Translations under genes and position numbers: made by a program | Assembly (NCBI RefSeq): GCF_036588685.1 | Contig: NC_086377.1 | Span: 25,482,001 to 25,546,000, forward strand | Reading direction: 5' to 3' | From: Mytilus trossulus | Lineage: Eukaryota | DNA length: 64,000 nt | Shown: piece by piece, positions 30,609 to 52,587 of the stretch | How positions within the stretch are numbered: position 1 is the stretch's first letter | How the letters are laid out: each line of letters opens with the position of its first letter | The notes under the pieces: model-generated | Told to the model about the DNA's origin: nothing | Seen by the model: only the letters and a program-made list of their open reading frames with translations | Databases searched by the model: none

Positions 30609-33000
30609 CTAATACAAGGATTCATTCGGAATTATTTGCTGTGAATATATTTGGCTGGGTCCTGTTTTTGGGGGATACATATATCTTGTTCCTGTGTTTG
30701 GGGGATACATATATCTTGTTCCTGTGTTTGTTTGCTGGTAATTATATTGTTCTTGACTTTGGTAATTGCCGTGACCAGCTGTGGATGTATACTGTGACGG
30801 TGGTGGTATCAACCTCCCTTGTTCACTCAACCCTCCTAAAATAAATTTGATACACTTTAAAAATAGATTTTAGAAGATGTGGTATGAGTGCCAATGAGAC
30901 AACTCTTCATCCACAATACAATGTAATGATTTTACAGCAGGAGATACGAAGTACAACAACATAAACAACTTTGTATTGTCAGTGAAAAAACCCAAATTAA
31001 GACCTATGAAAATGTGCAAGAATTGCTTGAAATAATATTAAAAGGATTATTATATGTTCAATTTATGTTTAAATATAGTTTATCATTTAATATTCAAAGA
31101 TACTAAATAAATCTACGACTTTTTCATTTTGTTTTAAGGAACAAGTAAAGGCTATCCGTTTGACAATATTTGTATTACCTCCTAATTAAACACTGTTTCA
31201 GAGTTCAACATGATTTCCTTTCTGCATTTGAATGTGACATTACAAGATGAGACTTATTTTGTACTTAGATAAGCTACACAACAATGGCCTTCCTTAACAC
31301 CTAAGACCCCCACCCGTTTTAAGTAGGGTACGTGTTCGGTTTTGTTATGTTGTGTTGCGTATACTGTTGATTGTCTTTTCGTTATTTTGTGTATGTTACC
31401 ACGGGTTTTTATTGTTTGTTTTTTAACGTTTGTGTTTTAATGTCACTGATGAGTATTATGTAGACCAAACGCGCGACTTGAGTATCAAATTATAAGCCTA
31501 GGACCTTGATAACTATTTATTTGTATAGTTTGCTCCTCAATATCTTAAATTACTATAATCGAACATTCAAATCCCAAGTAGACACACTTCCCATTTCAAT
31601 TCTCTATGTTTTTCCTTATTTGAGCTTTATAAGGGCCAGCTGTGGATGAATACTGTGTATGTAAATCATGGCCAAATCAAATGACAAAACACATAAAAAA
31701 CAAATGGACAACAACTGTCATATTCCTGACTTGGTACAGGTATTTTCAAATGTAGAAAATGGTGGATTAAACCTGGTTTATAAAGCTAAACCTCCCACTT
31801 TCTAATGATATCAATCTGCTTCTTTCACTCAACCTTTCTATAAAATCGTTTTTGATTTTGTTTTTTCTGTTATCACTTTGTTACACATTTAAAACCATTA
31901 CTGAAATTATTTACTACACCAGATATGCATCACGACAATCTATATTTCGGCATTGAATTTCGAATATAAAATGTTTGAAAATTTAAAACCTAATACAAAT
32001 GATTGATTGATACTCCACATCAGTACAGAAAAGTCACTATAACAGCAAGAGTTTGTTTTAAAATTGATTTTAGAATTAAATCACTTTCGCAACGGATTGA
32101 AATATGTAAGGGGTGTCAGTTGCAGTATTAGGCGCTGGTATATTTCTCTTTGATAAACGATTGTAGATAACAGAGTATATTAGAATTTGAACAAACAACT
32201 GATCAATTTTGGAGTGAAAATTTCAACTTCAAAAAGTGTTAAATTACCATTTATGCGAAAATCCTGCCGACCTCCTCGTCTATATAGTGCACATGCTGCT
32301 GCAATCAATACACAGAAGATCACCATGCAAACACAAATCCCTACAAAAACTCCTATTTCGTCGCAGCACTGTTTCATATCACCTATTGTAGTTGAACCGC
32401 AACACCCATTCAGACAGAACTCATAGACCGTAAAGTCGTCTGGATGGTAGTTCGGAAAAACTGGATCGTACATAATCTTTTTATAGTAACATGATCCTGT
32501 ATCAACTCCAGCTACAATAAAACAACGTTATTAATTGAAAATCATTGTTAAATACATATAAATGCATCTAAGAATAATATAAACATATGTATTTGTCTCT
32601 TGCAAAGCTTCCTTCTTGATCTTGGTGGATGAGAAAAGGAGGTGCACTTACTATTGTAATAAGCCACTGGGATGTGCAACTATGTTGACTTTAATGATAT
32701 ATAAGAAGGTCGTAAAATTAAGACGAAACATACAACAGATTTGCTGACTAAATCATTTCTCACTACTCAGATGCTGATCTTTTTACACAGGTGAAATAAA
32801 GAACTTGTCGTAAAAGATAAATGAAATTGTCTAAGCTGTGTATCTGTTATTGAAATTGCGAAATAAATAATAATTGCTCCAGATACATTTTGTTGTCAAA
32901 AATACGTGATATTGTATGTTTATGAAGTATTTACAAATTTGAAACCGGTTATCTACCAAATGTCAAACCTACCAAAAATGACATATAATATCAACCTCAT
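30609..33000 (-). CDS. Six-cysteine single-pass membrane protein, paralogue A (Shisa/WBP1-VOPP1/CYYR1-like; 172 aa, long tail)
   Basis: Exons 33000-32973 (MRLILYVIF), 32511-32248 (AGVDTGSCYYK..YEFCLNGCCGSTTIGDMKQCC-TM-RRGGR) and 30835-30609 (GLSEQGRLIPPPSQY..YMYPP..ESLY*). All introns are phase 1, GT-AG. Confidence 0.85.
31633..31845 (-). pseudogene. Decayed duplicate of the 5' part of paralogue A exon 3, split by a repeat insertion
   Basis: ccagctgtggatgaatactgtg and gatatcaatctgcttctttcactcaacctttctataaaat match 30775-30845 and are separated by about 145 bp of a common interspersed repeat. Confidence 0.65.
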
Positions 33001-33054
33001 CTGTACTGAGAATAATACTTTTGTTTACAACAAACATGCACGATGATTATACAC

Positions 33055-33402
33055 AATAAATAATAAAATTGAGAATGGAAATGGGGAATGTGTCAAAGAG
33101 ACAACAACCCGACCAAATAAAAAAAACAACAGCAGAAGGTCACCAACAGGTCTTCAATGTAGCGAGACATTCCCGGAGGCGTCCTTCAGCTGACCCCTAA
33201 ACAAATATATACTAGTTCAGTAATAATGAACGCCATACTAATTTCCAAATTGTAAACAAGAAACTAAGATTTCAATAATACAAGTCTAACAAAGGCCAGA
33301 GGCTCCTGACCTGGGACATGCGCAAAAATGCAGCGGGATTAAACATGTTTATGAGATCTCAACCCTCCCCCTATACCTCTAGCCAATGTAGAAAAGTAAA
33401 CG
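33055..33402. repeat. Interspersed repeat immediately upstream of paralogue A
   Basis: aataaaattgagaatggaaatgggg..gaggctcctgac..accctccccctatacctct. A partial homologue lies at 59480-59590. Confidence 0.65.
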
Positions 33403-35421
33403 ATGACTATACATAATAACTAAACATGCAAGACAACAATCTTTGATGTTTCATTCGATGTCTCTATCTTCGTGTTTTATCAAAGTACGTGCTATCGAAC
33501 AAAAACATTTCGGTCTTACACAACACATAGAGCGGCGGATAATTGGTGTAAAGATTAACGATACACAAAACTTTTAAATCACATGTGTTTACCTCTAGTA
33601 ATATTTTAAGCAGGTATGAATTAACATGATTTTTTTTTTATAAAGGCAGATCAGGACATTAGAGACATAGTACATGTTTCAAAAATATTTTTACATGTAT
33701 AATATAGTTTGTTTTAATTAACACATCTATGATAGAATCGGTAAATGTATAGCCTGAAATTAAACCAATCAAAGACAAGAGTACAATTTTCTCCATATTT
33801 GTGTTGATTATACGGCCCAGGTACATGAAGTGTAATAAAAAGTGTTGTTCCTTGTTATATTAAACACGGAAGAGAAATTTTATCACATCCTTATGACAGT
33901 AATGATAACGAGTGTTTATGCATGGCGACATGTATGCATAAAAAAATATATATAAAAATAAATAGATGTGGTATGATTTCATATGATACAACTCTCCACA
34001 AGAGACCAAACGAAACGAAAATTTTAAATAACTATATGTACGAACAATGGGTTATAGAAGTTATTTGTATACTATTTTATGTACCATATGAACTTTTCCA
34101 ATTTCAAGTAATCTTCATCTGTCGTAGAAACCCCATTATCCCAAATTACGCATCTAGTGATAACACATTGGTACCGTAAATGCCATTGCATAAACATTAC
34201 AACTAATGCACATGCGTCGGTTAAAAAAGGCAAATAATTTTAGTCCGAACCACGATTTGATGCTTTCCACAATTTTACCGATACCTTACTAATTATTATA
34301 TTTGTTCAAAATGTTAAAAACCATTATTAGAAGAGTATCTGTAAAAGAACTGTTATATACAGCAAACACTGACCAACATTAAATGAAAATCAAGATTTGA
34401 TAAACACATTGTCTTATATCGCTCACTAAACATTGAAACCGGACAAAAATCAGCTAAACGCAACATTACTGTGACAACAACCCCAAAACAAGTTGTTTTT
34501 CTTATCTAAATAGTTTATCGTATGTCTTTTGATGTAAAAATAAGAAAACATTTATTCAGATTTCAAAAAAAAGTTCCAAAAAGGTTTATCAGTTATAAGA
34601 CGTTATCTTGTTGTTTTTTGTGTTTTACAATTTTCAGAATAGATTGTCTCTACAGTGTTATATATATATATATAAGTTTAAGGTTTGCTCGATATGTTTG
34701 CATCATTCGTTTATATTGATATCAATATAAATAAGAAGATGTGGTATGGGAATTAATGAAACATTCTGCTTCAAAATCACAATGTTAAATAAGTAAACAA
34801 TTGTATGCCGAAGTACGGCCTTAAACTTGGAGCCTTGACTCACACAGAACAGCAAGTGAGAAAGGGCTACAAAATTACTAATGGAAAACAATTCAGTTGT
34901 TGTCCATTTGTTTGATGTGTTTTATCGTTTGATTTTGCTAATTGATTAGGGAATTTCCGTTTTGAATTTTCTTTGGAGTTTAGTATTTCTGTTATTTTAT
35001 TTTTTTCAAACAGGACAACCAATTGTTTAATATATATGAAAATTGAGAAACGAGAAACACATATGAACCACATCAATAAACAACAATCATTATACAACAG
35101 GGTCTCTAAATTGTCCAAATATAAAAGAGAAGATGTGGTATGATTGCCAATGAGACAACTATCCACAAAAGACCAAAATGACACAAACATTAACAATTAT
35201 AGGTCACCGTACGGCCTTCCGTAATTAGCAAAGCAGCAAAGACTGCTTGAAATTTGATGGATATACATAAGTTTTTATTGATTATTACCATTAACAAGAC
35301 ATGTTATCGTAGATTTTTAATCGTTACGAATATTACAGAGCTAAACAGTGGAAAAAAGCATCAAAGAAAAATATAAAGTTGTGAAAACATTAATTTAATC
35401 TTTAAATATAAAATCATACTA

Positions 35422-35630
35422 CTGTGGATTCATTATTATTCGTTGGATACCAATTTTCGTTGGTTTCGTGGATACAGGTAAACCACGAATTCAAATGTTC
35501 AACGAATATCATGTTTCCATCAGGCTTTGTATACAGAGATTGGCAAAACCACGAAATCAAATATCCACGAATATACAAATTTTCAGCAATCCATGAAAAT
35601 TGATTCCCACGAAAATAAATGAATCCACAG
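35422..35630. mobile_element. TA-targeting MITE (Tc1/mariner-type)
   Basis: ta|CTGTGGATTCATT...AATGAATCCACAG|ta. A degenerate relative lies at about 16788-16995 and a longer relative at 57611-58376. Confidence 0.8.
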
Positions 35631-35826
35631 TATTGCATCTTCATTCTTTTTTCTTTTTATTTGATCGTCACTGATGAGTATGATAGACGAGACATGCGTA
35701 TGACGTACAATATTCAAAACTTGGTATCGAAGATGATTTTATTGTTAACAAAGTAGTATTATGTCTGCTGTACGGACTTTATATAGTACTCTTTGGTGAA
35801 CACACAATTCCTTGATCTGTTTCTGT

Positions 35827-38800
35827 TTACTGGTAAATATTCTTTGCTTGTCTCTGAAAGTTTGTATGACTTTCTGTTGACTGATAACCTGGTATCACCA
35901 ATCTGTCTTGTTCAGTCGATCCACCTACAAAACGAAAATGGATAAATATGATATTTTGACGTCAATATACAGGAGAAGACCAACAAAAACAGATACAGCT
36001 AAAATTATTGGACTTACGACCCATGAAAAATAATAACTAAGTTAATGTATCTCAATTCAGAGAGACATCCTGTCATAATTATAGAAGGGAAACAGCTGTA
36101 AATCATTTAACTATCTAGGCAGTTGTATAACATTAGAAGGAGGTGATGAAAGAGATTTCAAGATCAGAATAGGAAAAGCTAAATCCGCATTCATTAGATT
36201 ATGCAACATCTGGACCACAACAGCCTTTTCAAAGAAGCCAAGCTCAGACTCTATATCAGCTGTGTACTTTCCTTACTCCGATATGTCTCAGATTGCTGGA
36301 GAATGACTGCAGCTTCCATAACACATGTCTGGGGAAGATAATGAAAATATTCTCTCTATATATATAACAAAGACCTACATGAGATGACCAAGGACATGGA
36401 GACTTTACTTATACAAAAAAGATTGAGGTGGCTTGGTCATGTTATACGCAAACCATCTGATGACTTGAACAAGGTAGCCCTTAGATGGACATCAGAGGAA
36501 AAAAGAAAAAGAGGCCGACCTAAAACAACATGGAGACGCACCATAGAAAATGAGCTAAAGGAAAGAGGATATGCCTGGGTCACAGTGGAAAGAAAAGCAA
36601 ACAACCGAGAAGAATGGAGGAAACTTGTCAATGCATTTTATGTCATAAGGCATATTAAGGACTAAATAAGTAAGTAAGTATTCTGATGTCAAACACGCGA
36701 GGCAATGAATGTGGTTTTAAAATTTGATAGATGCTTTTGTGCTTTTTTTCAAAATATTTTTTTGTTTTGAGATTGAGACACAGTGATGACTGCTGTACCA
36801 ATGTTTTGAATATTTTACCTATTATTTATGTTTTGTACACGCATCGTTGTAAATTTTATGGATTTTTATGTGACTGTCATACAAGTGACAGGTTAAGCGC
36901 CATAAAACCACGCTCAATCCACCATTTTCTACATTACCTGTACCAAGTCAGTTGTTGTCCATTCGTTCGATGTTTTTTATAATTTGATTTTGCCATTTGA
37001 TTGAGGACTTTCCGTTTCCATTTCTTCCTCGGAGTAGATTATTTTTGTTCCATTAATTTAAAGTTTTTCAGAGTGATTTTATGTGTAGTTTTGTTCTTGT
37101 GGTGTGTAGTAAGTTTGAGAAAACTATATTATTAGTTAGAAAATGATATAGATCAACTTACGAACAAAACAAATCCTTTAAAACAATCAGGTGTATTTAT
37201 TGACAGTTTTGTATTACACATTCTCCCATTATCATTTAAAAAATTAAATATTAAACAACTTATAGTCCCTGGTTATATAAGAGCGAAAACAATGAAGTCA
37301 GACTGACATAATGCATGATTATGACGTGCGTCAAGTTATAACATACTAAAAATCCGATAATCTTCATAGAAATTGTCAAATCAAATTGCGGTCATTAGAC
37401 TGGACAAAGGCCTCTTTTTACAACTTCGAAAACTTGTATACAACGTATTCGTTGAATAAGTTCTGAGTGTTTACAAATGTGTTAGACGGACGGAAAACAC
37501 TTTAAATATGTTCCTCCAACAAAGTGCGCAAACTGACAATTTTTGATTACATACAGTTCCTGTCTCCAAGTTTTGCATACAAGGAAAATGAAATCCCCCC
37601 GTTCTACTCTCTATTTTAAAAAAAAAATATTTGAGATCCTCCAGTGTTTTTGGATTGATACATGCTTTTCAAAATTTTGAAGGGGTAACTTCATCGGGTG
37701 ATGAAAAAGTAACAAGAACAAAATAAAAAGAAGGAACGTTATGTTATTGTATGAAAAGGCCCAGGATCTGCAGATCTGCATTTTAATGAGGTTGTGAAAA
37801 GGACAGTAACACAGTCAAACGAATACCATTACTTATACCGTGTAAAACTCTACGTCTTCGTCGTCTATACATGTATACAGCTGTGATCACCAACGCCACG
37901 AAGACCACTACAGCAATCAGAATCCCAATAGTAGCCCCTGTCGAGTTACAGCAATGTTTTAATCCACCTTGTTTATCGGCCCCACAGCAGCCAGCAAGGC
38001 AGTACTCATAGGTAGAGGTATAGTAAGTTGGATCCGTATGTTTGTAGTAGCAAGATCCTGCATACACGTTAGCTTCAGAGGAAGAAAATAGATAACTACG
38101 TTAAATTTGCGAAAATAATCAAAATGCATTTCCTGGCAGTAATCTAATAATTCTGTCTGTGAAATTGAATTTCATAATTCATGTTATTGTATTAGACAAG
38201 GGTTTAGGACCCCTTGGTATAGCATATTTTGAATACTAGTATGACATGTATGATGTGGCTAATCTGTTTATATATAAATAAGAAAATGTGGTCGGATTAC
38301 AATTAAAAGCAGTACATGACGATACATTTGTAATTCCTGTAATTAGTTAATACTTCAGTTTTATCATGTACATCTTTTGTATAGTCATTTTATAAAATTT
38401 ACTGTTTGCAAAAGTATAAATTATTCTAAATAATAGGGATATTCTGGTAACTAACAAAAAACTCTTGCCGTTTTTGGCACAACTTTTTTTATCTTTTGGT
38501 CCTCGATGCTGTTCAACTTTGTACTTGTTTCGGCTTTCAAACTTTTCTATCTGGGCGTCACTAGTAGGTCTTGTGTGGACAAAATGCACTTCTGGCGTAT
38601 TAAAATTTTGAACTTGTTGCCTTTTGTTGGCTGTTGCTCATGTGATTCTTTGTCAATTGTGTTCTCCAATTTATTTATATTGGTGTCCTGTGGTGTTGTG
38701 TTGTCATTTTGATGTTTTATTTCACATGGCCATAAAAATGCGAGTTTTGGCATGCCACAAAACCAGGTTCAACCCACCATTTTGTCCTTAAAAAATGCCC

Positions 38801-39273
38801 TGTAACAAGTCAGAAATATGGCCATTGTTATATTATAGTTCGTTTCTGTGTGTATTACAATTTAACGTTGTGTCGTTTGTTTTCTCTTATTTTTTAGTGT
38901 ACATTCACATTGCGATAAGACGTGTCACGGTACTTGTCTATCCCAAATTCATGTATTTGGTTTTGATGTTATATTTGATATTCTCGTGGGATTTTGTCTG
39001 ATGCTCGGTCCGTTTCTGTGTGTGTTACATTTTAGTGTTATGTCGTTCTCTTATATTTAATGCGTTTCCCTCGGTTTTAGTTTGTTACCCTGTTTTTGTT
39101 TTTTGTCCATGGATTTATGAGTTTTGAACAGCGGTATGCTACTGTTGCCTTTATTTGTATAAGTACTTATAAGAATGTCTGAATTGATGTGTGAAAGTTA
39201 TATTAAATGAATACAATGTATATTAATTAATGAACGTACCAAATAATGACGATAACAGCACAATATTTTCCAT
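35827..39273 (-). CDS. Six-cysteine single-pass membrane protein, paralogue B (~121-125 aa, short tail)
   Basis: Exons 39273-39240 (MENIVLLSSLF), 38072-37839 (ANVYAGSCYYK..YEYCLAGCCGADKQGGLKHCC-TM-RRRRRR; alternative phase-1 donors 6 and 12 nt further on) and 35924-35827 (GSTEQDRLVIPGY..NIYQ*). Confidence 0.85.
35965..36680 (+). mobile_element. 5'-truncated RTE-clade LINE fragment in intron 2 of paralogue B
   Basis: RT C-terminal motifs FNYLGS, RIGKAKSAF..L..IW, RLRWLGHVIR and KRKRGRPKTTW, with frameshifts and a (TAAG)n tail at 36665-36680. Confidence 0.9.
38340..38615 (+). mobile_element. Old copy of the hammerhead-bearing repeat with a degenerate core
   Basis: Reverse-complement homologue of 51203-51470. 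The core reads CTAGTAG..CAAAA instead of CTGATGA..GAAA. Confidence 0.7.
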
Positions 39274-39689
39274 GTTTCAATTAACACCTTTAGCTAATCT
39301 ATCAATTTAATATAAATGAATATACAATGAAGAAGGAAGTTTAACTGGATTACTTCCTAATAGGACACTTGAATGGTTATACAAAATTAGCTGTTATCAT
39401 AGGGTGAATTTAGAATAATTAAAATTCAAACGTATTTGACGTTTTATTTAATTCACGTACTACTTTCAACCTTTTTGAAAATCCTATTGACAATAAAATG
39501 TTTGGCTTATCCTTTTCTTACTTTATATTTACAGCTAAAATTGAATGCATTATATTCAAAATTAGTCAAGCGTATAATGTATAAAACGAGAACACTAAGT
39601 AACATCTTCTTGCTATAGTTTCTTTAAATAACCCTGTATAAACACGATAACAATAAAGCCGGAAGTAGTGGCTGCTAAGCCATTATTCA

Positions 39690-40100
39690 GAATGTATTTA
39701 ATCTAGAAATCTTCAAATACCAAATCCAAAGTCTGAATTCTTTAAAAATACTTTTCAATATTCTGGTCTAATCATTTGGAATAGTTTGCCAAATAATATA
39801 AAGGATTTCAGACATTTAGAAAGCTTTATGCAGAAATTTGCTATTCTCTGTATCACAAAACAAAAGGAGTAGACAAACTATGTTTAGCACATTCTTGTCA
39901 TGCTAGTTTAACAGTCTGTTTTCATGCTTGTGTATACATTATGTATTTGTAATTGTGTACATCTCTATTGATTATTGTGCTATATGCATTGATAGTTATA
40001 TGAATTGTTCATTTAAATGAGTGAAGGTCTTGTGTGAGATTAACAAATGTAATGTTAAATGAGTTTCTTTCGTTAAAAAGAATTTATTATTATTATTATA
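39690..40100 (+). mobile_element. 3' fragment of a CR1/L2-like LINE
   Basis: NLQIPNPKSEFFKNTFQYSGLIIWNSLPNNIK (the WNxLP motif typical of the ORF2 end), followed by a 3' UTR and a (TTA)n tail at about 40084-40099. Confidence 0.7.
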
Positions 40101-40204
40101 AGCGAGCATATTAAGTTCGGTGCTTTTCTAAAGGTAAAGTGTAAGCGTAAACGGTAGATTATTAAATCATTCATACAAGTAGTGCACATTCATATTTCTT
40201 TATA

Positions 40205-41057: not shown

Positions 41058-44000
41058 TTTAAAACAAACGAACAATTGACCCGCATGTACTAACATCGGT
41101 GACACTTTTTATCTGTTTCTATTGTACATTGTTAACTGTAAACTTCGGAGAAAATGGTGGACAATGAATAGTCATTTAAATTAGGGATACACATGTTTTA
41201 TTAAACTCCCATCTGATTTCTTGTAGACTAAGACTAATCGACATGTAATTTAAAAAAAATATAGAATTGTGAAATAAATTCATTTCTGCCAATAAAGCTT
41301 CGCAATGTCTTTAAAAGGATTTCATTTTATAGCACGCCCAAAGAAAAACCATTGCCAAACATCAAAAAGTTCCGTTCTCAAGTTAGTGAAACAGCCAGAC
41401 ACACAGACAAACACAAGTATAATATAAATAAGATCTTTAGGGTTAACAGTTTGTCATACACTGGACCTTTATAGATCTTTTAATTGAGCATGGGAAAAGT
41501 ACTGAATATATTCCAGACAAAGAGGTAGGGTCATTTTCTGCTGACTTTTTTCCATTTGATAAAATAGGTTAATCATGTTTTTAAAAAGCCTGATTGATGC
41601 TTATTATAGTTATGAATATACGTCACATCATCTATTTTCATACCTTGAACAGGTATTTCTACAATAAACAAGGCCAAGACGATTTATTTTTTGTTTTTAT
41701 CAATACTGATTTTGTTTGTAAATGTTTAGAAGTGTCCAAATATAATTCATTGAGTTATCAACTAGAAGATGTTCAAAATTAGTTATGTTTAAAAAACCCG
41801 TTGCCTCAGTTAGCGTGTTAATATCGGTAAGTGATTGTAGTGTACATGCATTATATAGCTTTATTCAACATAAAACTAACAGAAAAAAACAATCCAAAAA
41901 TAATTAAAACAAACACATTTAATTTATGGACGGTGGTAACAATGTCAGTACTAGTACACAGTTTGTTGTTTTGAAATTGTTCTGCTCTGGCATTTCTTCG
42001 TTATGTGTATATTACACACAAAACGTTAGGGCTTCATTGTGATACATGATCAATTATCGTGTTATTGGTTAATATGTACAAGCACCTACTTCAGTTTGAC
42101 GGCAATTGTTCCTTGCATATATATAATAAAGGTGAACACAGTAATTGAAAGTAGGTGAAGAGTATGGATAGTTATAGGAACGCACACAATAAGCAACACA
42201 TTACTTTTTTCTTTAATGAAATGATTTATAGTCATAATGACTCTTTGAATTAAACAAACATCCCAAAATATGATAGGAATATTAAATTTTAATATTTCAA
42301 CACAAAAAATGCAAAAAATCTTTGTGAGATTTGAACACGTTCTTTAAAAAGCAATCCAATATTTAATGTTAGTAATATGCGCTACCGATGGAGCCACGGC
42401 GACTCTTAAGGACGAATTTGTTATTAAGCAGCTATATAGTTGCACTTGAGTGATGTTCCACTATTTGTTAAAAAAAGTTGTTTAAGGTGTTGAGGACAGT
42501 CTAAGCCAATTTCATTTTTTAGGATAAAAAAAGTTGTACAAAAACACGGTATATTCCGCATATTTGACTTTCGTCTTTTTTGGGGGTTAATTAAAAAAAA
42601 ATCAGACATCATTATATATAAAAATCCAGATATTGATCAAAAATCATTTTTATTTCTTGTTTTTATCGTAAATTTTATTCTTCCAGCACTTTTTGAAATT
42701 GGCCCTTCTATGAAGAAATTGACCTTTCCTCTTTTACATTTTCATGATACTGCACGATTTGAATATTGTGAAAGAGTTTGCTGTAATTCTTTAGAATTTG
42801 TACGGATCCACATTAGATTGACAACACTGGTTGAATATAACTCATCACGATATTTCTAGAAACAATATCTCACTGTACAAACAAATGTAGTAAACATTTA
42901 AGAAAGATGTTCAGTTTAGGTGACCAGGTTTAAGATGGTACATCATAAAATGATGAAATATCATTATATGATATCCAAAGGATAGAAGTTCAGAGTTGTG
43001 TTTTGTTCCTCTTTCGCGAAAGATGTAAACATGTTAAAGGTTACTTAGACCATTAGTTCGTCGTGTTGAAAAACGCTACTTTTTATATTTAATAAGAAAC
43101 TAAGAAAATGATACAAAGTTAATCTGAATGTTGATTTTTCTTTACTTTAAGTTTATTATATAACACAAGTACATCAAAGTTAAAAGAAATATACATAGTG
43201 GAGATATTTGTTAGCAGTAAATCATGGACACAAAATTACTTCCCCTACTCTGGTTCACAGAGTTATACTCAATACATAGTTTGACCGTCTATTATTCAGC
43301 ACAAAAACTGCACAAATTTATAAGGTAACTAGTTCTTATCATTTTTGTTACGGATATTACTCCAACTGTGTATTGTAGTTGATGAATGTGAACAAAAATG
43401 AAAGATGGCAAATTATAATGAATCCAACATTTCTGTAATGCTTCACTAATCAATAGAGCGCTTGTTCAATGTTCGATAATTCACAATAATAATTAGATTT
43501 ATCTTTTAATTGTTATTATGTATTCAAAGTCAAGATGATTAGGTTAGAAATAAGGACGTCCGGTTTGCAATATATATTTTGTACTTTATATAAAATGTTA
43601 GTTCCATTAGTTCATACATAATACACCAATTAACACTAAACATGTATCCTTATTGATTAATGATCTTTTGTCAGTCAATGTAAGAGATAGAAAAATCAAG
43701 TGAATAAACCCATCATAGAAACCAGGACTAACTTAAGTATATACGCCAGACGCGCGTTTCGTCTAAAAAAGACTCACCGGTGACACTCGAATCCAAAAAA
43801 GTTTAAAATGCCAAATAAAGTACGAAGTTGAAGAGCATTGAGGACCAAAATTCCTAAAAGTTTGGCAACATACAGCTCGGTTATCTTTGCCTGGGGACGA
43901 AAAGCCTAAGTATTTAAAATAATTCAAAATTTTGTAAACAGTTAATTTATAAATATAAATACTGAACTTCAGTAGTTCAAGTAAATGTCTTCAATAAAGT

Positions 44001-44185
44001 TGAACACACTTACTTTTTCAAACAATGTATCATCTGTAATATATTTACTCAAACATTAAAGATTGTTATACCAAAATTTAAAATTGATCACATTGTAATG
44101 CAACGATGGAGATTTCTGTTAGTATTGTCGTTATCATGCTGATTTATTCCACAATTATTGTCACCGTTGTCAGTCCTGTTGACCA

Positions 44186-47100
44186 TCAGTTCTGGTACGC
44201 AGGCGCATTAGGGGTGATTTGATGTGAGTACATGTTTCTGCTTCCTGTTTGTGGCGGATATATATAACCGGTTGTTGTGTTTGTTTGCTGGTAAGTATAC
44301 CGTCCTTGACTTTCATAATGATTATGGCCAGTGGCTGAAGGATATTGCGTGGCTGTTGTGGCTGTTGTAGTTGGTGGTATGAGTCTACCTCGTTCATTTG
44401 ATCCTCCTATAACAATGTATTAAATCAGATTCACTTTATTTAGTGGTTTGTCTCACATTTAATGATATTTATATATTGCGAAAAGATCACTCAAATACCA
44501 AACACATAATTGATAAGTATTTTCTACCCAAATTGATGGATTTTGACATTTGAAATGCCGTTACTTGTTTTTGCTGAACTTTTAAAGAGGTTCGGACTTC
44601 TTTACAAAAAAATGTTTGACTTTAATTAATTCACCAAAGCAAAGATCTGCGTTATAAATGTGATATGAGAATGCAAAACAACGACATCCGGAATCAACTT
44701 AAGAAGATTTTAATCGCGAAGAAACAAGGTTTCCTTAAAGAACTGGCCTAAACAAATATATGTTTGAGCTAGATCTACAATTGGTCATTGCTGGCAACCT
44801 CAAAGCAAGGTTGTGAAGATCAACTATTGCACCTTATTCCCAAATTGTGTTAAAAACGTATTCCATGGGTTAAATGTGGGATATTCCAAATACAACTAAA
44901 CCCAGGACAAGTGATTTGCAATTATGAAAGAATGAAAAAAATATTGCCCAAAGGTAAACAAACAAATGGAACTGACAATTATGAAACTTTCAAAAAGTCT
45001 ATGTACACTTACTGATTACGAATGAATCATTACGATGTCTTCTTCTACACAGGGCACAAATTATAAGTAGAAATGCGAGAAATCCTGCTGCACCAAGAAA
45101 TATTCCTATAATGGCTCCTGCATCCTTACAGCAATGTTTTTTACCATCTATTTCGGTTGAACCACAACAACCAGTAAGGCAGAACTCGTAGATCGAGTAA
45201 TCGTTATAGGAAAATGGTGACCATTGTTTATAATAGCACGATCCTGCATTACTTCCAGCTGCAGTATGATAAAAACTATTGGTTAGAAAAAATGCATTGT
45301 ACAGTTTATATGGAGAAAAAGAAACCATTTGAAAGTTTATTATTAAAATTCATAATTTTAAGACATATACATTGCCTTCCTTAGGGATAATTTCTCTACT
45401 CTCAGAATAATATGAAATACAACTGTTCTTTAATGTTCAACGATAAAATATAAACACATTCAGTTTAGTTATGAGCTGTTCGTAACTGTTATAGGATAAA
45501 CGTATTGTAAAAATAAAATAACAAAACTATCAAACTCCGAGGAATATTCATAATCAAATGGCAAAATCAAAACTCAAACACATCAAACGACTGTCATATT
45601 CCTGACTAGGCTTCTGTGCTAGGGTAGATTGTAAAAAATTATTATAAGTGACGTATTTTAGACTGGAACTTTGTGACGAAAAAGAAGGAATAATTGTCCG
45701 TAAACTGCATAAAAAAGGTAAATGATAACATCAAGTATCTATCACTGGTGTTAAACTGGTAACCATAACTGGAATTACGACGATCCCATAATGGAGACGG
45801 CAGAAATAGGTAAAATCTTTACAATAATTTTTCTCAAATGCAGCATGTTTTGTCAATAATTACTCAGCTGCAAGGTTTTTCTTATACATCATATTTCAAT
45901 CTTAACGTAGTACTGTTATTGTCTAAGTGCTTAGACAATTGCCGTTGGAAAAATCGGGATGATTATCGTAACTCTATGGCATTGTCCTTGTTTGATAATC
46001 GCAATTTCCTAATTGGATAATAATAACCGAAAAAGGATAAATGTGTCTTCCAGCATTTCAATGGTATTTTGTGTGTAAAAACGAAAATTTCTAGTTAAAC
46101 GATGACATTAAAAGGGCAATAGCTGTTTACTGATGTTAATCAATTTCTCATATTTGATTTATAACAATGAAAACTTTATCCAAACTATTGGATGTCTTAA
46201 ACAAGCAATTAGACGCCATTGCATTAATTATCGAGTTGACCATATAAGCGATGTGAACCTGAATATAGATATAAATAGATTAAGCAAACTCGTGCTGTTG
46301 GATTATTCTAGGTCTATTTTATTTCATATTAAAGATAAAAAACAAATGTTTACCATCGTTTGTACCTATATAAGAACGATTTTTTTGGATCGAATCAGTC
46401 AATCAAATGATTTATCTTTGTTGCACATTCAATGTTGACATTCTTGCTCTTTCAACAATTCTACACATACAATTCACGTGTTATCCATCTAAGGCTAAGG
46501 GGTTATATTTTGTTTTTTTACTCTTTTACGCAAAATAAAATAAATGAAGTAACTTACAGGTTAATATCTAGGACAAATTTACTTACATATCTCGATTTAT
46601 AACTGACAACAGTGTGCATAACTTTTTAATATATATACATGTTCCTGTTAAAGATATGGAAAATGAAGCAGCTACCGAGTCAGTTATTATGGTAAGTAGA
46701 TATTTTAATTTCATTCAAAGTTTCAATGTTGCGTGCGCGTTCAATGTTATTTTTTGATAAAAAAAAAAGGAGGGTATTAAAAATCCATTGCTCTAAATAA
46801 AAGTCCCGTATACCACAAATTTGATATGCCATGCTAGTATGTTTTCCTCTAATATCATGTTGAGACTAAAATTCTGCGTGTAATGAACAAAAGTTTCCAC
46901 CAATAACTTTTTGACTACATTATCGGATTTAACAGTTGATACTTGTATCGGTGTATATGAGTGTTCATATTGCCCTTTTCCTTATTTTTCAATAAAAATG
47001 CATATCTTTGCTCATTGTTGAAGGCCTATAGTTGTAAATGTATGTGTCATGTTGGTCTCGTGTTTCTGTGTATTACTGTTCTAATTTATTCTGTTTAGTA

Positions 47101-47207
47101 TGCTTGAAAAAAACACATTTAAAATTAATGCGTTAAGGTCAAGGTCAGTACACAATACGTATAATAAACTTACCGAAGATTGACCATAGTACTACAAGTA
47201 TCCTCAT
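44186..47207 (-). CDS. Six-cysteine single-pass membrane protein, paralogue C (166 aa, long tail)
   Basis: Exons 47207-47174 (MRILVVLWSIF), 45258-45013 (AGSNAGSCYYK..YEFCLTGCCGSTEIDGKKHCC-TM-CRRRHR) and 44406-44186 (GSNERGRLIPPT..YIYPP..APAYQN*). Phase-1 GT-AG introns. Confidence 0.88.
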
Positions 47208-49217
47208 ATTTCTATTTGTATGAACGGGTACGTCTCATTTAATTTTATTTTCGTTTTAAGTTTATTTCCTGGTTACACGGGAAAGCGGAAGGTTTCACTT
47301 CCTTATATGACTAATAATGTGTTCTATTGATAATTATGAAATGGAACTTTATTGATACATGTTGTATTGTTATTGATTATAACTTCCGTGATATGAAGGT
47401 CGTGAAATCAAGCACAATTAGTTCAAAACATATTTTATTATTCTGTTTATTTAACTATTTTGTACTCACAAAGACAATGTTTTTGTTCGTAAAGGTGAAT
47501 TCGAATTTCGTTACAGGCCTTATACGTGTAGCGAACATATTCGTAGGCAGGAAAACCTTCAATTTTGTATCAGATGAGGTCGGCGTTCAACACACTTATC
47601 CACTAGAGAGGAGGTTTGAACTCACAGCCTAGTGATCACTCAAAGTAGACTAGTTAGACAAAATTACACCCAGACAATGAAAATAGCACTTCAAATTATG
47701 TTCATGAACTATTCATGAAAGTCCTTATCATATAATGCTCAAACCGAAACTTTCGATAGTTTGCAATACGAACAAAACGAGATCAAAGACAGTAAAGGAT
47801 TAAATTTGTTTTCGGAGGCGACAGCAGAAACAATGACAATAGCTAAGTCCAATCATGATCATCAATACTGGATCATTTACAAATTTGCACCGACATGAAC
47901 AACCGGAAGTGTGAAATAGGTAAATCATGACATGTTCATTCTTCTGGAGCATTAGATATTACCATCGGGTTTTGTTTTAATTCTTGTTGCTGATTTATTA
48001 GATATATATGGCAATGTAATGTTTAAGTGAAACTGTTATAAATGAAAAAACTATCAACCAAATTTCAAATAAGTAAAAGCAAGCAATGATTGGCAATCAT
48101 ACGCCATTCGACAAGGTTAAAAAAATGTAGACCGTAAAGTCGGCTATAAAAGGTCCCTACATAATACAAGTAATAATTTTATAACAATTCAATTGAGAAA
48201 ACTATCGGCATAGATTAAAGAAAAAAAATATGACAGACATGAATTAACGTTAACCACTGAGCTATATGCTCCTGATGTTTATTGAGGTTTGATTTTTGAT
48301 TATCTTATTAGAAATAAGTAAAGGTGTTAAGGTCAACTATCCACCAGAGCTGTAATGACGTTGACATGATCAATTATACAGCGCACACACTTCAAGAATG
48401 CTTAAGTAATTAACACAATAACATCATTTAATTTCAATAAAACATTACAGTTGCAATGAATTTCATAAAAGAAAAGAATGGTTGATAAAAATAGAAAATG
48501 TAAAAGACACATTTTTCAAAGACACCAGCCAGACCAAAGATCACCAAACAGTTTATTTAAACAAGTTCATCTGTTCAACTGGACACCACACTAAATTCCG
48601 AAAAAACACTAATACATAACAAACAAAAATGTGTCCCAAAAACACGGATTCCCCATCCGCACTATCATTTTTTTACGTTCAATGGACCGTAAAAATGGGA
48701 TAAAATCTTTAATTTGGCAAAAAAATTATAAATAGAAAGATCATATCATAGGGAACATGTTAATTAAGATTCAAGTTGATCGGACTTCAACTTCATCAAA
48801 ACTACCTAGACCAAATACTTTAACTTGAAGCGAGAAAGACGAACGAGCGAACGAACGGAAGGACGAACAAGCGGAAGCACAGACCAGAAAATATAATGCC
48901 CATATGTAGGGCATTAAAAACACACGCTTAATGCTTGACGTTCATTTTTTGTGGAAATCACACCTTAAATACTTCATACCTAAAATTAGTTTTAATTAAC
49001 TATATTTCATATTTAAATATTTTAATATATATAGCAAAAAACAAAATAAACTATAGCATAATCGTTACATGTTTCAAGGAAAAATAAAACAACGAAACAA
49101 TTGTGGAGAAAGCAGTTGTTGTATTTTAATAACAGCTGAAAACTAAGCAATGCAAGGTCTTCTTTGCAGACGCATTCGCAATATATATTGTGACGGGCTC
49201 TCATTATCAGTTCCAAA

Positions 49218-52200
49218 TTATGTTTCATGTGTTATTCCGTGACTTTGATACTGCTTTTGACCATCTGTTGACAGATTCGACGGTGAACCTGGTTTCACTA
49301 ATCTGTCTCGTTCAGACGACACATCTGAAATAATTATATGATTTAACATGAAATACATAAACCTTTATTGTTTTTTCAGTTTATATGTGTGTTTGTGTGT
49401 ATTGTTTTATTCCCATTTGTTAGCTTTATAAAGATACAATATAACAATTCATGAAAAAGAAACACAAAAAAAATGTAAACAACACAGGTAAATGTCGTCT
49501 GAACGTTTTTGTAAAACTACAATTTGATTATTTCAGGCTGAAAAAAAAAACGACATTGAGAGGCCTTTTTATAAGCATACATTTACTTGATCTAAACACG
49601 GAAAGTTATAAGTAGAGCATTGTAGTTTCAGACAATAAATCAATCGCGTATCTTAACAAACAAGTAATTTTTGGGGCTCATTATAGCTAGATGTTCAGTG
49701 TGAGCCAAAGCTCCGTGTTCTAGACCTTACTTAATTGCTAACTTTTACATCATGTACATATTGTGACAAGGATGGAAAGTTGTCTTTTTGGTACTGATAC
49801 CACATACTCATATATCTATAAACAAGCCTGAAATTCATTGGTTGTCGTTTGTTAATGTGTTACATATTTGTTTTTCGTTCATTTTATTTGTAGATAAATG
49901 AGGCCGTTAGTTTTCTCGTTTGAATTGTTTTACATTGTCTTATCGGGGCCTTTCATAGCTGACTATGTGGTATTGGCTTTGCTCATTGTTAAAGGCCGTA
50001 CGGTGACCTATAATTCTTAATGTCTGTGCCATTTTTGTCTTTTGTGGATAGTTGTCTCATTTGCAATCATACTACATCTTCTTCTTTAAAATTTATAAGA
50101 ATAGATTCCACTAAAAAATATACCTTTATGTGTGTAATAATGCAATACTTTGAAAATGTTTTGTAACGTTACAAAATCAAATTCACATACTAGTATATCT
50201 ATGAACAAGATAAATTCTTCAAAATATGAAACAAAAGTGAATCTTGCTCAAAAAGGAAAACAACATGTTATGTGTGTCCGAATCAATTTTTTGGATTAAC
50301 CTCAATTAGGAACGCTGACAGCTGAAAAATTTAAAGCATAGAATATAAAGGGACCAAATTCATACCATTTACAAGTAAAAGTCTACGTCGTTTTTGTCTA
50401 TACACGAAACCAGCAGTGACTACCAGTCCAACGAAGAGAACCAAAGCAATCAGAATTCCAATTGTAGCACCAGTAGAGTCACAGCACTGATTAATACCAC
50501 CACGTTTATAGGCGCCACAACATCCAGCAAGACAGTACTCATAATGCGTCGTTGTATTTGTATAGAATTCAAACGGTTTTGGAGTGAACACGTTCATATG
50601 TTCATAGTAGCATGATCCTGCATATACTTCAGCTTCAAAGAAAAAAAGCGTCTTTTGTAACACCCAATCAATGACAATAAACTACAAATAGGCGAATTCC
50701 ACTTATAAATAATCTTGCAAATCTATTTGAAGTACTGTTTACGGCACTCAAAGTTATAAAATAAAAGCGGAAATAAAAAATGTATATGCAAAAAGATATG
50801 TTATGTAAAGACACTAAACAGGAGTTAGTACTTGAATAACACGTTCAATAACTTTCGCTTTGGGAGATGTGAAAATTTGTTTACGATAAAAAAAAAATCA
50901 TATTTCCCTGTGCCGATGCCCTCATGTAGTATACATTTTCTTAGCTGAACACCATGGGAAGAATAAACTAAATGTATAATACTTTTATATCTATATGAAA
51001 TTCCATTTTGTCTTCTTGAACATGTTACCTTTGATTTTAACTAACTAAGTGACATTTCTATCCTAAAAATAAAAATAGGGAAAACGCAGAACTGTATAGG
51101 ATCTGTCCTTGTCTTGTAAAAACATGATATCAAGCTGATAATTTAAAACTTGCAATTTGGCTAATAAAAAGTTCGAATTTCATATATATTTGATGTCTGA
51201 TTATAGTTATCAGAAGTACCAGGATTATAATTTTATACGCCAGACGCGCGTTTCGTCTACATAAGACTCATCAGTGACGCTCAGATCAAAATAATTAAAA
51301 AGCCAAACAAAGACAAAGTTGAAGAGCATTGAGGACCCAAAATTCCAAAAAGTTGTGCCAAATACGGCTAAGGTAATCTACTCCTGGGGTAAGAAAATCC
51401 TTAGTTTTTCGAATAATTCAAAGTTTTGTAAACAGAAAATTTATAAAAATGACCATATAATTGATATTCATGTCAACACCGAAGTGCTGACTACTGGGCT
51501 GGTGATACCCTCGGGGACGAAACGTCCACCAGCAGTGGCATCGATCTAGTGGTGTAAATAGTTATCAGAAGTACCAGGATTATAATTTTATACGCCAGAC
51601 GCGCGTTTCGTCTACATAAGACTCATCAGTGACGCTCAGATCAAAATAGTTAAAAAGCCAAACAAAGACAAAGTTGAAGAGCATTGAGGACCCAAAATTC
51701 CAAAAAGTTGTGCCAAATACGGCTAAGGTAATCTACTCCTGGGGTAAGAAAATCCTTAGTTTTTCGAATAATTCAAAGTTTTGTAAACAGAAAATTTATA
51801 AAAATGACCATATAATTGATATTCATGTCAACACCGAAGTGCTGACTACTGGGCTGGTGATACCCTCTTTTAATTAAAATGGCAGAAAACTTATAAAAGT
51901 AAAAAGCAAACGTATGTTCATACACGGACGGACTAAACTTTCCAATAATTTTTATCAAAATTAGATTCATTGGCATTATACAGTATATCTACATTACATG
52001 TTCTATATGCCAAATGTTGAGAAAGCTAGGAAAACCCGCAAATACCTAGTTTTGGATAAGCTTTTGATGAAAGAGAGGTAACCTATTTTTACCTAATTTA
52101 ATATCGATAAAGCTGTCAGATTTATCTTTCCAGTTGTATATCAATATTTCTGTAAATGTATTTGAAAGAATAGAACATTTCTTTATAAGTAATGATTTTA

Positions 52201-52587
52201 AAGCACAGTTTGAAAACACTACATCATTCATTAAAAAGTTCTAGTCCAAATTATTTATATATGATTTGTATTCAATTACTATACATGAATAAAATATTTG
52301 TGATAAAAATGCAAATTTCACTAGAACAGTATTTAAGGGTGTAGACCTTTGTCCTGGGAGATAACTCTTTGAATCAGTTATGCGTTTTTAAAAGTCAAGT
52401 ATCATCAATGTATTTTAAGCATTTACCTGAAACAGATTAGATATAGTCTATGTAACCTAGAAGCTTAGAATATATTTATGAAAAGGGTTAACACAAATGT
52501 ACTGATGATTTTAAGAGTTACTTCCCTTAACCAAGGTCTACCTCCTTAAAACTTACTGATTAACGACAACAATATTCCTTTAATCAT
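49218..52587 (-). CDS. Six-cysteine single-pass membrane protein, paralogue D (134 aa, short tail)
   Basis: Exons 52587-52557 (MIKGILLSLI), 50632-50366 (TEVYAGSCYYE..YEYCLAGCCGAYKRGGINQCC-TM-RQKRRR) and 49324-49218 (DVSSERDRLVKPG..THET*). Phase-1 GT-AG introns. Confidence 0.85.
51236..51280 (-). ncRNA. Type I hammerhead ribozyme (copy 1)
   Basis: GCGUCA-CUGAUGA-GUCU(uaugu)AGAC-GAAAC(gcgc)GUC^-UGGCGU. The catalytic core is intact, with stem I GCGUCA/UGGCGU, a 4-bp stem II and a minimal palindromic stem III. Predicted cleavage between 51243 and 51242. Confidence 0.88.
51591..51635 (-). ncRNA. Type I hammerhead ribozyme (copy 2)
   Basis: Identical to copy 1. Predicted cleavage between 51598 and 51597. 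Confidence 0.88.
52337..52545. mobile_element. TTAA-targeting MITE (Kolobok-like) next to the exon-1 donor of paralogue D
   Basis: ttaa|GGGTGTAGACCTT...AAGGTCTACCTCC|ttaa, with the imperfect TIR extending inward. Confidence 0.7.

What the first reader, a model, noticed from the sequence alone, without database searches (positions are those of the whole stretch)
30609..52587. Tandem cluster of four miniature six-cysteine membrane proteins with a hypervariable aromatic loop: a candidate variable receptor/adaptor family
Seen: four co-oriented 3-exon genes share a signal peptide, a fixed scaffold (GSCYY - loop - YE[FY]CLxGCCG - x9 - CC), one TM helix and a basic stop-transfer. The Cys1-Cys2 loop differs in both length and sequence (24, 16, 18 and 25 residues in A, B, C and D) and is rich in Tyr/Phe/Trp/Pro (IMYDPVFPNYHPDDFTV, HTDPTYYTST, QWSPFSYNDYSI, HMNVFTPKPFEFYTNTTTH). 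Known: the C-C-CC-CC pattern plus a single TM and a Pro/Tyr tail defines the Shisa-like/WBP1-VOPP1/CYYR1/TMEM92 group of transmembrane adaptors. Inference: a constant disulphide scaffold displaying one variable aromatic loop looks like a diversified ligand-recognition surface, possibly an undescribed bivalve immune or cargo-receptor family.
Basis: partly seen in the sequence, partly recalled or inferred. Interest (0 to 1): 0.85.

Follow-up and report, generated by a model that had tools for sequence, protein, structure and literature searches.

The report
Mussel Shisa-like mini membrane-protein cluster
Four neighbouring mussel genes encode tiny single-pass membrane proteins that are a Mytilus-specific offshoot of the known Shisa/CYYR1/WBP1 adaptor superfamily; they are real and slightly unusual, but their variable loop is mostly a family-wide trait, not evidence of an immune-type receptor.

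Summary
Four co-oriented minus-strand genes, in the order D-C-B-A, each have three exons, GT..AG introns all in phase 1, and intact ORFs of 134, 166, 121 and 173 aa. Models B, C and D are identical to Mytilus trossulus RefSeq "uncharacterized" proteins. RefSeq's model of A lacks my exon 1.

The Shisa-like assignment is supported. A profile search finds over 400 clusters, largely molluscan where named, carrying C*C*CC*CC, a TM helix and PPxY tails. Some hit Pfam CYYR1, WBP-1 or Shisa_N. hhalign between the cluster's subfamily and this family gives 99.5% probability.

The "hypervariable recognition loop" reading is only partly supported:
- A Tyr-rich Cys1-Cys2 segment of 4-22 residues occurs across the whole family.
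- AlphaFold models it as an exposed β-hairpin.
- Loops of A, B and D are conserved between Mytilus species.
- Only the C lineage diverges fast there (40-50% versus 11-18% elsewhere).

The cluster is distinctive in one way. It has no [LP]PxY motif, but every tail carries ExxxL[IV], which is seen in 1 of 130 relatives.

My best reading is that these are endosomal trafficking adaptors. Other first-reader notes flag further Shisa-like clusters in this genome.

The parts
33766..33796 (-). Gene A exon 1 (short signal-peptide exon, MEKIVLLSLI plus 1 base). It is only probable: the donor is weak (GTTTAA) and the exon is absent from the RefSeq model P0014.
   Evidence: It holds the only phase-compatible GT in the ORF, at the position homologous to the donors of B, C and D. 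8 of 10 residues are shared with exon 1 of M. galloprovincialis P0178.
32248..32511 (-). Gene A exon 2: Cys domain, TM helix (about 32285-32353) and basic stop-transfer.
   Evidence: Identical to P0014 from its internal Met onward.
32417..32488 (-). Gene A Cys1-Cys2 segment (24 aa).
   Evidence: It differs at 3 of 24 positions from the M. coruscus orthologue, against 19 of 56 in the rest of the domain.
30609..30835 (-). Gene A exon 3: cytosolic tail with EQGRLI (30807-30824), two YMYPP repeats and no [LP]PxY.
39240..39273 (-). Gene B exon 1 (signal peptide).
   Evidence: The model is identical to M. trossulus LOC134719542 (P0004).
37839..38072 (-). Gene B exon 2: Cys domain (loop 38002-38049, 16 aa), TM helix (about 37870-37938) and an RRRRRR stop-transfer.
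   Evidence: The AlphaFold model has a hairpin at E17-24/E29-36 and a helix at 56-89.
35827..35924 (-). Gene B exon 3: short tail with EQDRLV (35896-35913).
47174..47207 (-). Gene C exon 1 (signal peptide; donor GTAAGT).
   Evidence: The model is identical to LOC134718700 (P0007).
45013..45258 (-). Gene C exon 2: Cys domain (loop 45182-45235, 18 aa) and TM helix (about 45050-45118).
   Evidence: The loop is the fastest-changing part between C subtypes.
44186..44406 (-). Gene C exon 3: tail with ERGRLI (44378-44395), one YIYPP, and a C-terminal APAY where distant paralogues have PPPY.
52557..52587 (-). Gene D exon 1 (signal peptide; donor GTAAGT).
   Evidence: The model is identical to LOC134719543 (P0179).
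50366..50632 (-). Gene D exon 2: Cys domain (loop 50535-50609, 25 aa, with an NTT sequon) and TM helix (about 50403-50471).
   Evidence: The AlphaFold model has a hairpin at E17-26/E34-43. The loop differs at 0-2 of 25 positions between species.
49218..49324 (-). Gene D exon 3: short tail with ERDRLV (49296-49313). Similarity to the longer tail of P0002 continues in frame past the stop codon.

Best explanation
The region holds a tandem array of four real, old paralogous genes, in the transcription order D, C, B, A on the minus strand. They form a subfamily seen only in Mytilus among named sources, inside a large expansion, largely molluscan where named, of the STMC6 superfamily of single-pass adaptors (Shisa-like, CYYR1, WBP1, VOPP1, TMEM92).

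Each protein has these parts:
- a short signal peptide;
- an ectodomain of about 45-55 residues, in which the Cys1-Cys2 segment is modelled as a Tyr-rich β-hairpin sitting on a CC...CC knot next to the membrane;
- a TM helix that opens with a conserved GxxxG or small-xxx-small motif;
- a basic stop-transfer;
- a cytosolic tail.

Unlike most relatives, the tails have no PPxY or LPxY motif for NEDD4-type ligases. Instead they carry a conserved S/T-E-x-x-R-L-[IV] acidic dileucine-type signal about 13-18 residues after the membrane.

Inferred mechanism: the proteins are sorted by clathrin adaptor (AP) complexes through the endosomal system. They act in cis as trafficking or turnover adaptors for other membrane proteins, which they contact through the hairpin and the GxxxG helix. 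Each paralogue would have its own fixed hairpin, and so its own partner preference.

What is shown: gene structure, homology, motif content, and the conservation pattern.
What is inferred: localisation, AP binding, partner binding, and any role of the hairpin in specificity.
For: Gene models and identity to RefSeq proteins.

Family size: 402 representatives at E<=1e-3. Of 141 newly listed hits, 130 have C*C*CC*CC, and 97 of those have [PL]PxY.

Source names of relatives: CYYR1-like, shisa-5, shisa-4-like.

Pfam on 98 members: CYYR1 in 15 (best 3.5e-13), WBP-1 in 14, Shisa_N in 11.

hhalign of the subfamily against the broad family: 99.5% probability, E 1.7e-22, with all six Cys, GCCG and the TM helix aligned.

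A broad-family profile with no subfamily rows finds B, C and D in the whole genome at 1.5e-13, 1.8e-11 and 1.4e-9.

An ectodomain-only HMM, with no TM columns, ranks B, D and C as the top 3 of 1553 six-frame fragments of the window.

ESM Atlas neighbours are molluscan shisa-4-like, WBP1-like and CYYR1 clusters at 0.92.

Tree: the subfamily is one clade (SH-aLRT 95), and each paralogue groups with its orthologues, M. coruscus included for A, B and C.

Purifying selection outside the loop: dN/dS 0.2-0.5.

Motifs: ExxxL[IV] is in all four genes and most orthologue models (absent from the older B model P0003), but in only 1 of 130 broad-family tails. [LP]PxY is absent from all four.

Conserved G at the start of the TM helix.

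Hairpin models.

STMC6 proteins act as membrane adaptors in endosomal and ER trafficking (PMC11399591, PMC5578492).
Against: No cluster protein reaches a Pfam gathering score. The best is WBP-1 at E 0.13 on P0002.

Gene A alone is weak against the broad profile: absent at E<=1e-3, and E 0.69.

The dileucine in B and D ends in LV, which is a weaker form than LL or LI.

The AlphaFold ectodomain confidence is moderate (pLDDT about 70-87), and no solved structure matches.

TM-driven similarity can reach E 1e-5, as with APP C99. The homology case therefore rests on the aligned cysteines.
Confidence: 0.6

Rival explanations
1. One reading: the Cys scaffold displays a hypervariable aromatic loop that serves as a diversified ligand-recognition surface, making this a new bivalve immune or cargo-receptor family.
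For: Loop length and sequence differ between the four paralogues. The segment is modelled as an exposed hairpin, so it is not buried. In the C lineage the loop differs by 40-50% between subtypes, against 11-18% in the rest of the protein (p down to 1.5e-4). Extra C-type copies exist in M. edulis and M. galloprovincialis.
Against: The loops of A, B and D are conserved between species: A 3/24 against 19/56 elsewhere, D 0-2/25. Within each C subtype the loop differs at 0-3 of 21 positions. Between paralogues the loop is no more diverged than the TM helix. Variable Tyr-rich loops occur throughout the family. There are only four loci here, with 1:1 orthologues across Mytilus. No expression or challenge data exist.
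Confidence: 0.12
2. The loop differences are largely unselected indel and substitution drift in a compositionally constrained, Tyr-rich structural hairpin. Function would lie in the CC knot, the GxxxG helix and the tail, so the paralogues would be functionally redundant or differ only in expression.
For: Family-wide loop lengths of 4-22 aa with 24.5% Tyr. The paralogues are old, with dS about 1. The invariant columns are the cysteines, GCCG and the TM glycines, not loop residues.
Against: In A and D the loop is more conserved between species than the TM helix or scaffold: p 0.06 for A, and 0.015-0.09 for D against P0002. That argues for sequence-specific constraint within each paralogue.
Confidence: 0.2
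3. The cluster is a set of degenerating duplicates that lost the adaptor function: PY motifs gone, B and D tails shortened, and the first exon of A failing.
For: None of the four has [LP]PxY. Similarity to a longer tail continues past the stop codon of D. C ends in APAY where distant paralogues have PPPY. The donor of A exon 1 is GTTTAA, and RefSeq omits that exon.
Against: All ORFs are intact. 1:1 orthologues are kept in up to four Mytilus species. dN/dS is 0.2-0.5. The ExxxL[IV] motif is conserved in every gene. Logan contigs shorter than the genomic gene span encode full C-, D- and E-type proteins, which implies spliced mRNA (this is an inference).
Confidence: 0.08

Closest known systems
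[quoted passage not shown]
   Same: Signal peptide, small Cys- and Tyr-rich ectodomain with the C*C*CC*CC pattern, one TM helix directly after it, and a short cytosolic tail. Relatives of the cluster hit PF10873 (15 of 98, best E 3.5e-13) and are named CYYR1-like by NCBI. CYYR1 is a late-endosomal adaptor (PMC11399591).
   Different: CYYR1 works through three PPxY motifs that bind WWP1, WWP2 and ITCH. The cluster has none and carries ExxxL[IV] instead. The cluster proteins themselves do not reach the Pfam threshold. The Cys1-Cys2 segment is long (16-25 aa), and the CC-CC spacer is 10 residues against the family's usual 7.
WBP1, WBP1L, VOPP1 and TMEM92 (Pfam WBP-1, PF11669)
   Same: The same six-cysteine pattern and topology. 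14 of 98 relatives hit PF11669. P0002, a D-type protein, hits it weakly over the CC-to-TM region (E 0.13). The nearest ESM Atlas clusters include a molluscan 'WBP1-like' cluster.
   Different: No PY motifs. All matches are below threshold. There is no 1:1 orthology.
Shisa proteins (Pfam Shisa_N, PF13908)
   Same: Single-pass proteins with an N-terminal Cys-rich domain. They act in cis on other membrane proteins (Frizzled, FGFR, AMPA receptors) (PMC5578492). 11 of 98 relatives hit Shisa_N, and some are named shisa-4-like or shisa-5.
   Different: From my own knowledge of Pei & Grishin 2012, which was not readable here, Shisa proper has an eight-cysteine domain and long proline-rich tails. The cluster has six cysteines and short tails.

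Membership tests
STMC6 / Shisa-like superfamily (Pei & Grishin 2012, as summarised in PMC5578492 and PMC11399591) | Six ectodomain cysteines in the pattern C*C*CC*CC, directly after a signal peptide | tested here: met
   All four genes have C-x16-25-C-x3-CC-x10-CC starting 1-2 residues after the predicted cleavage site. The six Cys columns are invariant in the alignments.
STMC6 / Shisa-like superfamily | Short type I single-pass protein, with the TM helix immediately after the Cys domain | tested here: met
   A hydrophobic 23-residue segment starts 3 residues after the last CC and is followed by an R/K-rich stop-transfer. AlphaFold places a helix at 56-89 in B and 64-105 in D. No dedicated signal-peptide or TM predictor was available.
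STMC6 / Shisa-like superfamily | PY motifs (PPxY or LPxY) in the cytosolic tail | tested here: not met
   There are no [LP]PxY matches in A-D or in their orthologues, against 97 of 130 relatives. C ends in APAY, and A and C keep YxYPP repeats. Distant paralogues in the same genome (P0017 and P0020 types) do have PPPY.
STMC6 / Shisa-like superfamily | Detectable sequence or profile homology to recognised members | tested here: met
   hhalign gives 99.5% probability and E 1.7e-22 against a family whose members hit Pfam CYYR1, WBP-1 and Shisa_N. An independent profile finds B, C and D. An ectodomain-only HMM ranks B, D and C as the top 3 of 1553 fragments. The link is transitive, and gene A is tied in mainly through its similarity to C.
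Pfam CYYR1 (PF10873), WBP-1 (PF11669), Shisa_N (PF13908) | Score at or above the family's gathering threshold | tested here: not met
   No cluster exon or orthologue reaches threshold. The best is WBP-1 at 13.4 bits against a cut-off of 28.1. The ten relatives scanned one by one were also below these families' cut-offs: CYYR1 24.3 against 31, WBP-1 20.8 against 28.1.
Acidic dileucine sorting signal [DE]xxxL[LI] (AP-1, AP-2, AP-3 binding) | The motif lies in a cytosolic tail at least about 6 residues from the membrane, and its function is shown by AP binding | tested here: inconclusive
   The sequence motif is present and conserved: EQGRLI, EQDRLV, ERGRLI and ERDRLV, about 13-18 residues after the TM helix. 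B and D have LV. Binding cannot be tested with these tools.

The most novel reading that the evidence does not exclude
The C lineage of this subfamily is a rapidly diversifying hairpin-display receptor with variable copy number. The tip and first strand of its β-hairpin would evolve under positive selection, with several subtypes kept across Mytilus species. That would make it a minimal recognition module of about 50 residues, coupled to endocytic sorting by a dileucine tail, and a new kind of invertebrate recognition or uptake receptor built on the STMC6 scaffold.
Probability: 0.12. Interest if true: 0.7.

Novelty: new variant of a known kind. Interest (0 to 1): 0.35.

Why it matters
STMC6 adaptors (CYYR1, WBP1L, Shisa) control the turnover and surface delivery of receptors in vertebrates. 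Their very large molluscan radiation, over 400 clusters at 50% identity, is essentially undescribed in the papers I could search. This cluster shows one way the scaffold has been rewired: the NEDD4-recruiting PY motifs are replaced by an AP-type dileucine signal, while the ectodomain hairpin differs between paralogues. If confirmed, it would give a compact natural system for asking how a 50-residue ectodomain and one helix confer partner specificity. The C lineage would be a candidate for fast-evolving recognition in mussels. As it stands, this is a useful annotation upgrade for four 'uncharacterized' genes rather than a surprise.

Tried and rejected
- **Pfam on the exons and orthologues:** only TM-driven noise.
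- **Fold searches of the B model:** Foldseek against PDB and VIA-align wide found nothing above helix-driven background, with Z <= 4.2.
- **PDB sequence search with the family profile:** only TM look-alikes such as APP C99 and sodium-channel beta subunits. I treat these as glycine-zipper composition, not homology.
- **The look-up of encoding contigs:** Without orthologous DNA I could not run a codon-based dN/dS on the loops and used protein-level counts instead.
- **Pei & Grishin 2012 (PMC3295595):** not held. The STMC6 definition comes from two papers that cite it.
- **Collinear non-coding similarity between the B-A and D-C halves:** none found beyond the exons. The idea of a two-gene block duplication therefore rests only on gene order and the tree.
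- **Joined spliced models:** built only inside local scripts and never sent to a search tool. For B, C and D the identical database proteins were used instead. The joined 173-aa model of A was not searched at all.
- **Rejected readings:** chance motif recurrence, pseudogenes, and 1:1 orthology to a characterised gene.
Full report
**1. Observation**

A six-frame scan finds the scaffold GSCYY - loop - YE[FY]CLxGCCG - x9 - CC four times, always on the minus strand, at about 32.4, 38.0, 45.2 and 50.6 kb. Each copy lies in an open frame that continues into a hydrophobic segment of about 23 residues and an R/K-rich stop-transfer.

I used database proteins as guides and read the junctions directly. 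From these I built four three-exon models with GT..AG introns, all in phase 1:

| Gene | Exon 1 | Exon 2 | Exon 3 | Length |
|---|---|---|---|---|
| A | 33796-33766 | 32511-32248 | 30835-30609 | 173 aa |
| B | 39273-39240 | 38072-37839 | 35924-35827 | 121 aa |
| C | 47207-47174 | 45258-45013 | 44406-44186 | 166 aa |
| D | 52587-52557 | 50632-50366 | 49324-49218 | 134 aa |

Models B, C and D are letter-identical to Mytilus trossulus RefSeq proteins LOC134719542, LOC134718700 and LOC134719543. The last 150 residues of A equal LOC134718699. The window is therefore M. trossulus, and the genes are already annotated, but only as 'uncharacterized protein'.

The RefSeq model of A starts at an internal Met and so lacks the signal peptide and Cys1. 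My exon 1 for A has a weak donor (GTTTAA). However, it carries the only phase-compatible GT in its ORF, at the position homologous to the other three donors. It also resembles exon 1 of a M. galloprovincialis relative, P0178. I call it probable.

The joined models were built only inside scripts.

**2. What could not be done**

There is therefore no direct read evidence for splicing or expression, and no orthologous DNA for codon tests.

Indirect evidence for spliced mRNA comes from Logan contigs of 1.1-1.8 kb that encode complete C-, D- and E-type proteins (P0173, P0002, P0175, P0176, P0180). The genomic genes span 3.0-3.4 kb. This is an inference that assumes similar intron sizes in the source species.

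**3. What family it is**

Pfam finds nothing but TM noise in the exons or their orthologues.

A whole-genome search with exon 2 of B finds the three neighbours plus five more distant loci. These are L003/L004 on the same chromosome and L007, L008 and L009 on another. Full-length relatives of L007 and L008 carry terminal PPPY or PPAY motifs.

A profile of these sequences, searched against 1.84 billion representatives, returns 402 proteins at E<=1e-3 and 68 at E<=1e-10. Of 141 newly listed hits, 130 have C*C*CC*CC, and 97 of those have [PL]PxY.

Sampled hits come from Biomphalaria, Haliotis, Argopecten, Aplysia and Saccostrea. [quoted passage not shown]

Of 98 members scanned, 15 hit Pfam CYYR1 (best 3.5e-13), 14 hit WBP-1 and 11 hit Shisa_N. 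The ten I scanned individually were all below these families' gathering scores.

Further tests of the link:
- hhalign between the GSCYY subfamily alone (A4) and the broad family without it (A5) gives 99.5% probability and E 1.7e-22. All six cysteines, GCCG and the helix are aligned.
- The A5 profile, used on the whole genome, finds B, C and D at 1.5e-13, 1.8e-11 and 1.4e-9, and at least 37 loci in all. It does not find A.
- TM helices can drive such scores: the same profile hits APP C99 at 1.4e-5. I therefore built an ectodomain-only HMM of 34 positions. Its top three hits among 1553 six-frame fragments of the window are exon 2 of B, D and C (E 0.002-0.006). A ranks seventh.
- The ESM Atlas places C next to molluscan shisa-4-like, WBP1-like and CYYR1 clusters at 0.92.

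The STMC6 definition is C*C*CC*CC after a signal peptide, one TM helix, and PY tails. I took it from PMC5578492 and PMC11399591, because Pei & Grishin 2012 was not held.

Conclusion: the cluster belongs to the STMC6 superfamily by homology and architecture, but it fails the PY-motif criterion.

**4. History of the cluster**

The GSCYY subfamily forms one clade (SH-aLRT 95). It comprises A-D, their orthologues, an E type (P0010, L003/L004) and two unnamed metagenomic sequences (P0026, P0056). Inside it, A pairs with C (92), and B and D sit with the E type (89). Each paralogue groups with its orthologues from M. galloprovincialis, M. edulis and/or M. coruscus. With 73 aligned columns, only these major nodes deserve trust.

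Synonymous divergence between paralogues is about 0.85 to saturated. dN/dS outside the loop is 0.2-0.5. The duplicates are therefore old and under purifying selection.

The gene order D-C-B-A, with D~B and C~A, and 2.0-kb spacers inside each pair against 4.9 kb between pairs, suggests that a two-gene unit was duplicated. No non-coding collinearity survives to prove it.

The database models P0005 (M. edulis) and P0006 (M. coruscus) are fused two-gene artefacts, D+C and B+A respectively.

**5. Is the loop hypervariable?**

- **Family context.** In 130 relatives the Cys1-Cys2 segment is 4-22 residues long (median 14). It is 24.5% Tyr and 31% aromatic, against 11% aromatic for the whole proteins. 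The cluster's values of 16-25 residues and 32-44% aromatic sit at the long end of a family-wide trait.
- **Between the four paralogues.** Non-synonymous difference at aligned loop positions (pN 0.26-0.53) is like that of the TM helix (0.14-0.51). It is higher only than the Cys scaffold (0.14-0.28). What stands out is length change.
- **Between species, genes A, B and D.** A differs from M. coruscus at 3 of 24 loop positions, against 19 of 56 elsewhere in the domain. B differs at 1-4 of 16. D differs at 0-2 of 25, while P0002 differs from D at 11 of 56 positions elsewhere. These loops are constrained.
- **The C lineage is different.** At least three C subtypes exist in M. edulis and M. galloprovincialis. 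Adjacent RefSeq accessions (XP_071140389 and XP_071140390) point to an extra copy. Between subtypes the loop differs at 40-50% of positions, against 11-18% in the rest of the protein (p down to 1.5e-4). Within a subtype it differs at 0-3 of 21. The changes concentrate in the first half of the segment.
- **Structure.** AlphaFold models the segment as a β-hairpin whose length follows the loop length. In B the strands are 17-24 and 29-36, with ectodomain pLDDT of about 82-87. In D they are 17-26 and 34-43, with pLDDT of about 70-77. A small CC...CC element and a long helix follow. The segment is exposed, as it must be in so small a domain. No solved structure resembles it.

**6. The tails**

No gene of the cluster, and no orthologue, has [LP]PxY. 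All four genes have ExxxL[IV] at the start of exon 3, at window coordinates 30807-30824, 35896-35913, 44378-44395 and 49296-49313. The motif recurs in most orthologue models and in the E type (ESESIL), but not in the older B model P0003. It occurs in only 1 of 130 broad-family tails.

A and C keep YxYPP repeats like those of the PY-bearing paralogue P0017, and C ends in APAY where P0017 ends in PPPY. B and D have short tails. In D, similarity to the longer tail of P0002 continues in frame beyond the stop codon. I read this as a change of sorting signal, from PY to dileucine, in the ancestor of the subfamily.

The most conserved non-cysteine positions are glycines at the start of the helix, forming GxxxG or GxxxGxxxG. 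That fits helix-helix association.

**7. Mechanism and verdict**

My best reading (0.6 overall) is that these are small type I adaptors. I put about 0.85 on the identity and about 0.4 on the mechanism. They would be routed by AP complexes through endosomes and would act in cis on partner membrane proteins, with a paralogue-specific hairpin.

| Rival reading | Confidence |
|---|---|
| Unselected drift in a structural Tyr hairpin | 0.2 |
| Degenerating duplicates | 0.08 |

The finding is real and correctly placed in its superfamily. The loop is less exceptional than claimed, and the tail-motif switch and the C-lineage hotspot are the parts worth following.

Other first-reader notes report further Shisa/WBP1-like clusters elsewhere in this genome (s1-829980, s1-826635, s1-820899). 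I did not test these, but they agree with the count of at least 37 loci.

Noticed in passing
window 51237-51280 and 51592-51635, minus strand (intron 1 of gene D): Two identical-scoring type I hammerhead matches (RF00163, 33 bits, 1 bit below the gathering score, E 3.1e-6) lie 355 nt apart on the gene's own strand. This is consistent with the retrozyme noted in s1-820653. A gathering-level scan of 30000-53000 had found nothing.
   Followed up: partly
window 38344-38607, 43741-43953, 31412-31519, 35651-35726: These are dispersed copies or fragments, 71-81% identical, of the repeat that carries the hammerheads at 51203-51867. They lie in introns and spacers of the cluster, mostly in the opposite orientation.
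   Followed up: no
window 36384-36665, plus strand (intron 2 of gene B): A 93-aa ORF resembles the C-terminal end of a non-LTR retrotransposon ORF2 (RLRWLGHV... motif). I recognised it from memory and did not search it.
   Followed up: no
window about 49188-49217 (just 3' of the stop codon of D): In-frame similarity to the longer tail of the D-type protein P0002 continues past the stop codon. The tail of D therefore looks shortened by a nonsense change that M. galloprovincialis P0001 shares.
   Followed up: partly
L003 (G000:C5:2804147-2804377) and L004 (G000:C5:179935-180165): Two nearly identical E-type copies of the subfamily lie 2.6 Mb apart in opposite orientation on the same chromosome. 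They could be a recent segmental duplication or an assembly duplicate.
   Followed up: no
G000:C1:31566503-31777604: At least ten matches to the TM and juxtamembrane part of the broad-family profile lie within 210 kb. This may be another tandem array of related single-pass genes.
   Followed up: no
P0005 (M. edulis) and P0006 (M. coruscus): These database proteins are fused two-gene models, D exon 2 with C and B exon 2 with A. They skip a tail exon and a signal-peptide exon and are annotation artefacts.
   Followed up: yes
Family profile A5 against PDB: The TM and juxtamembrane part of the family profile matches APP C99 at E 1.4e-5, which reflects glycine-zipper composition. It is a warning that TM-driven E-values of this size do not show homology.
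   Followed up: partly
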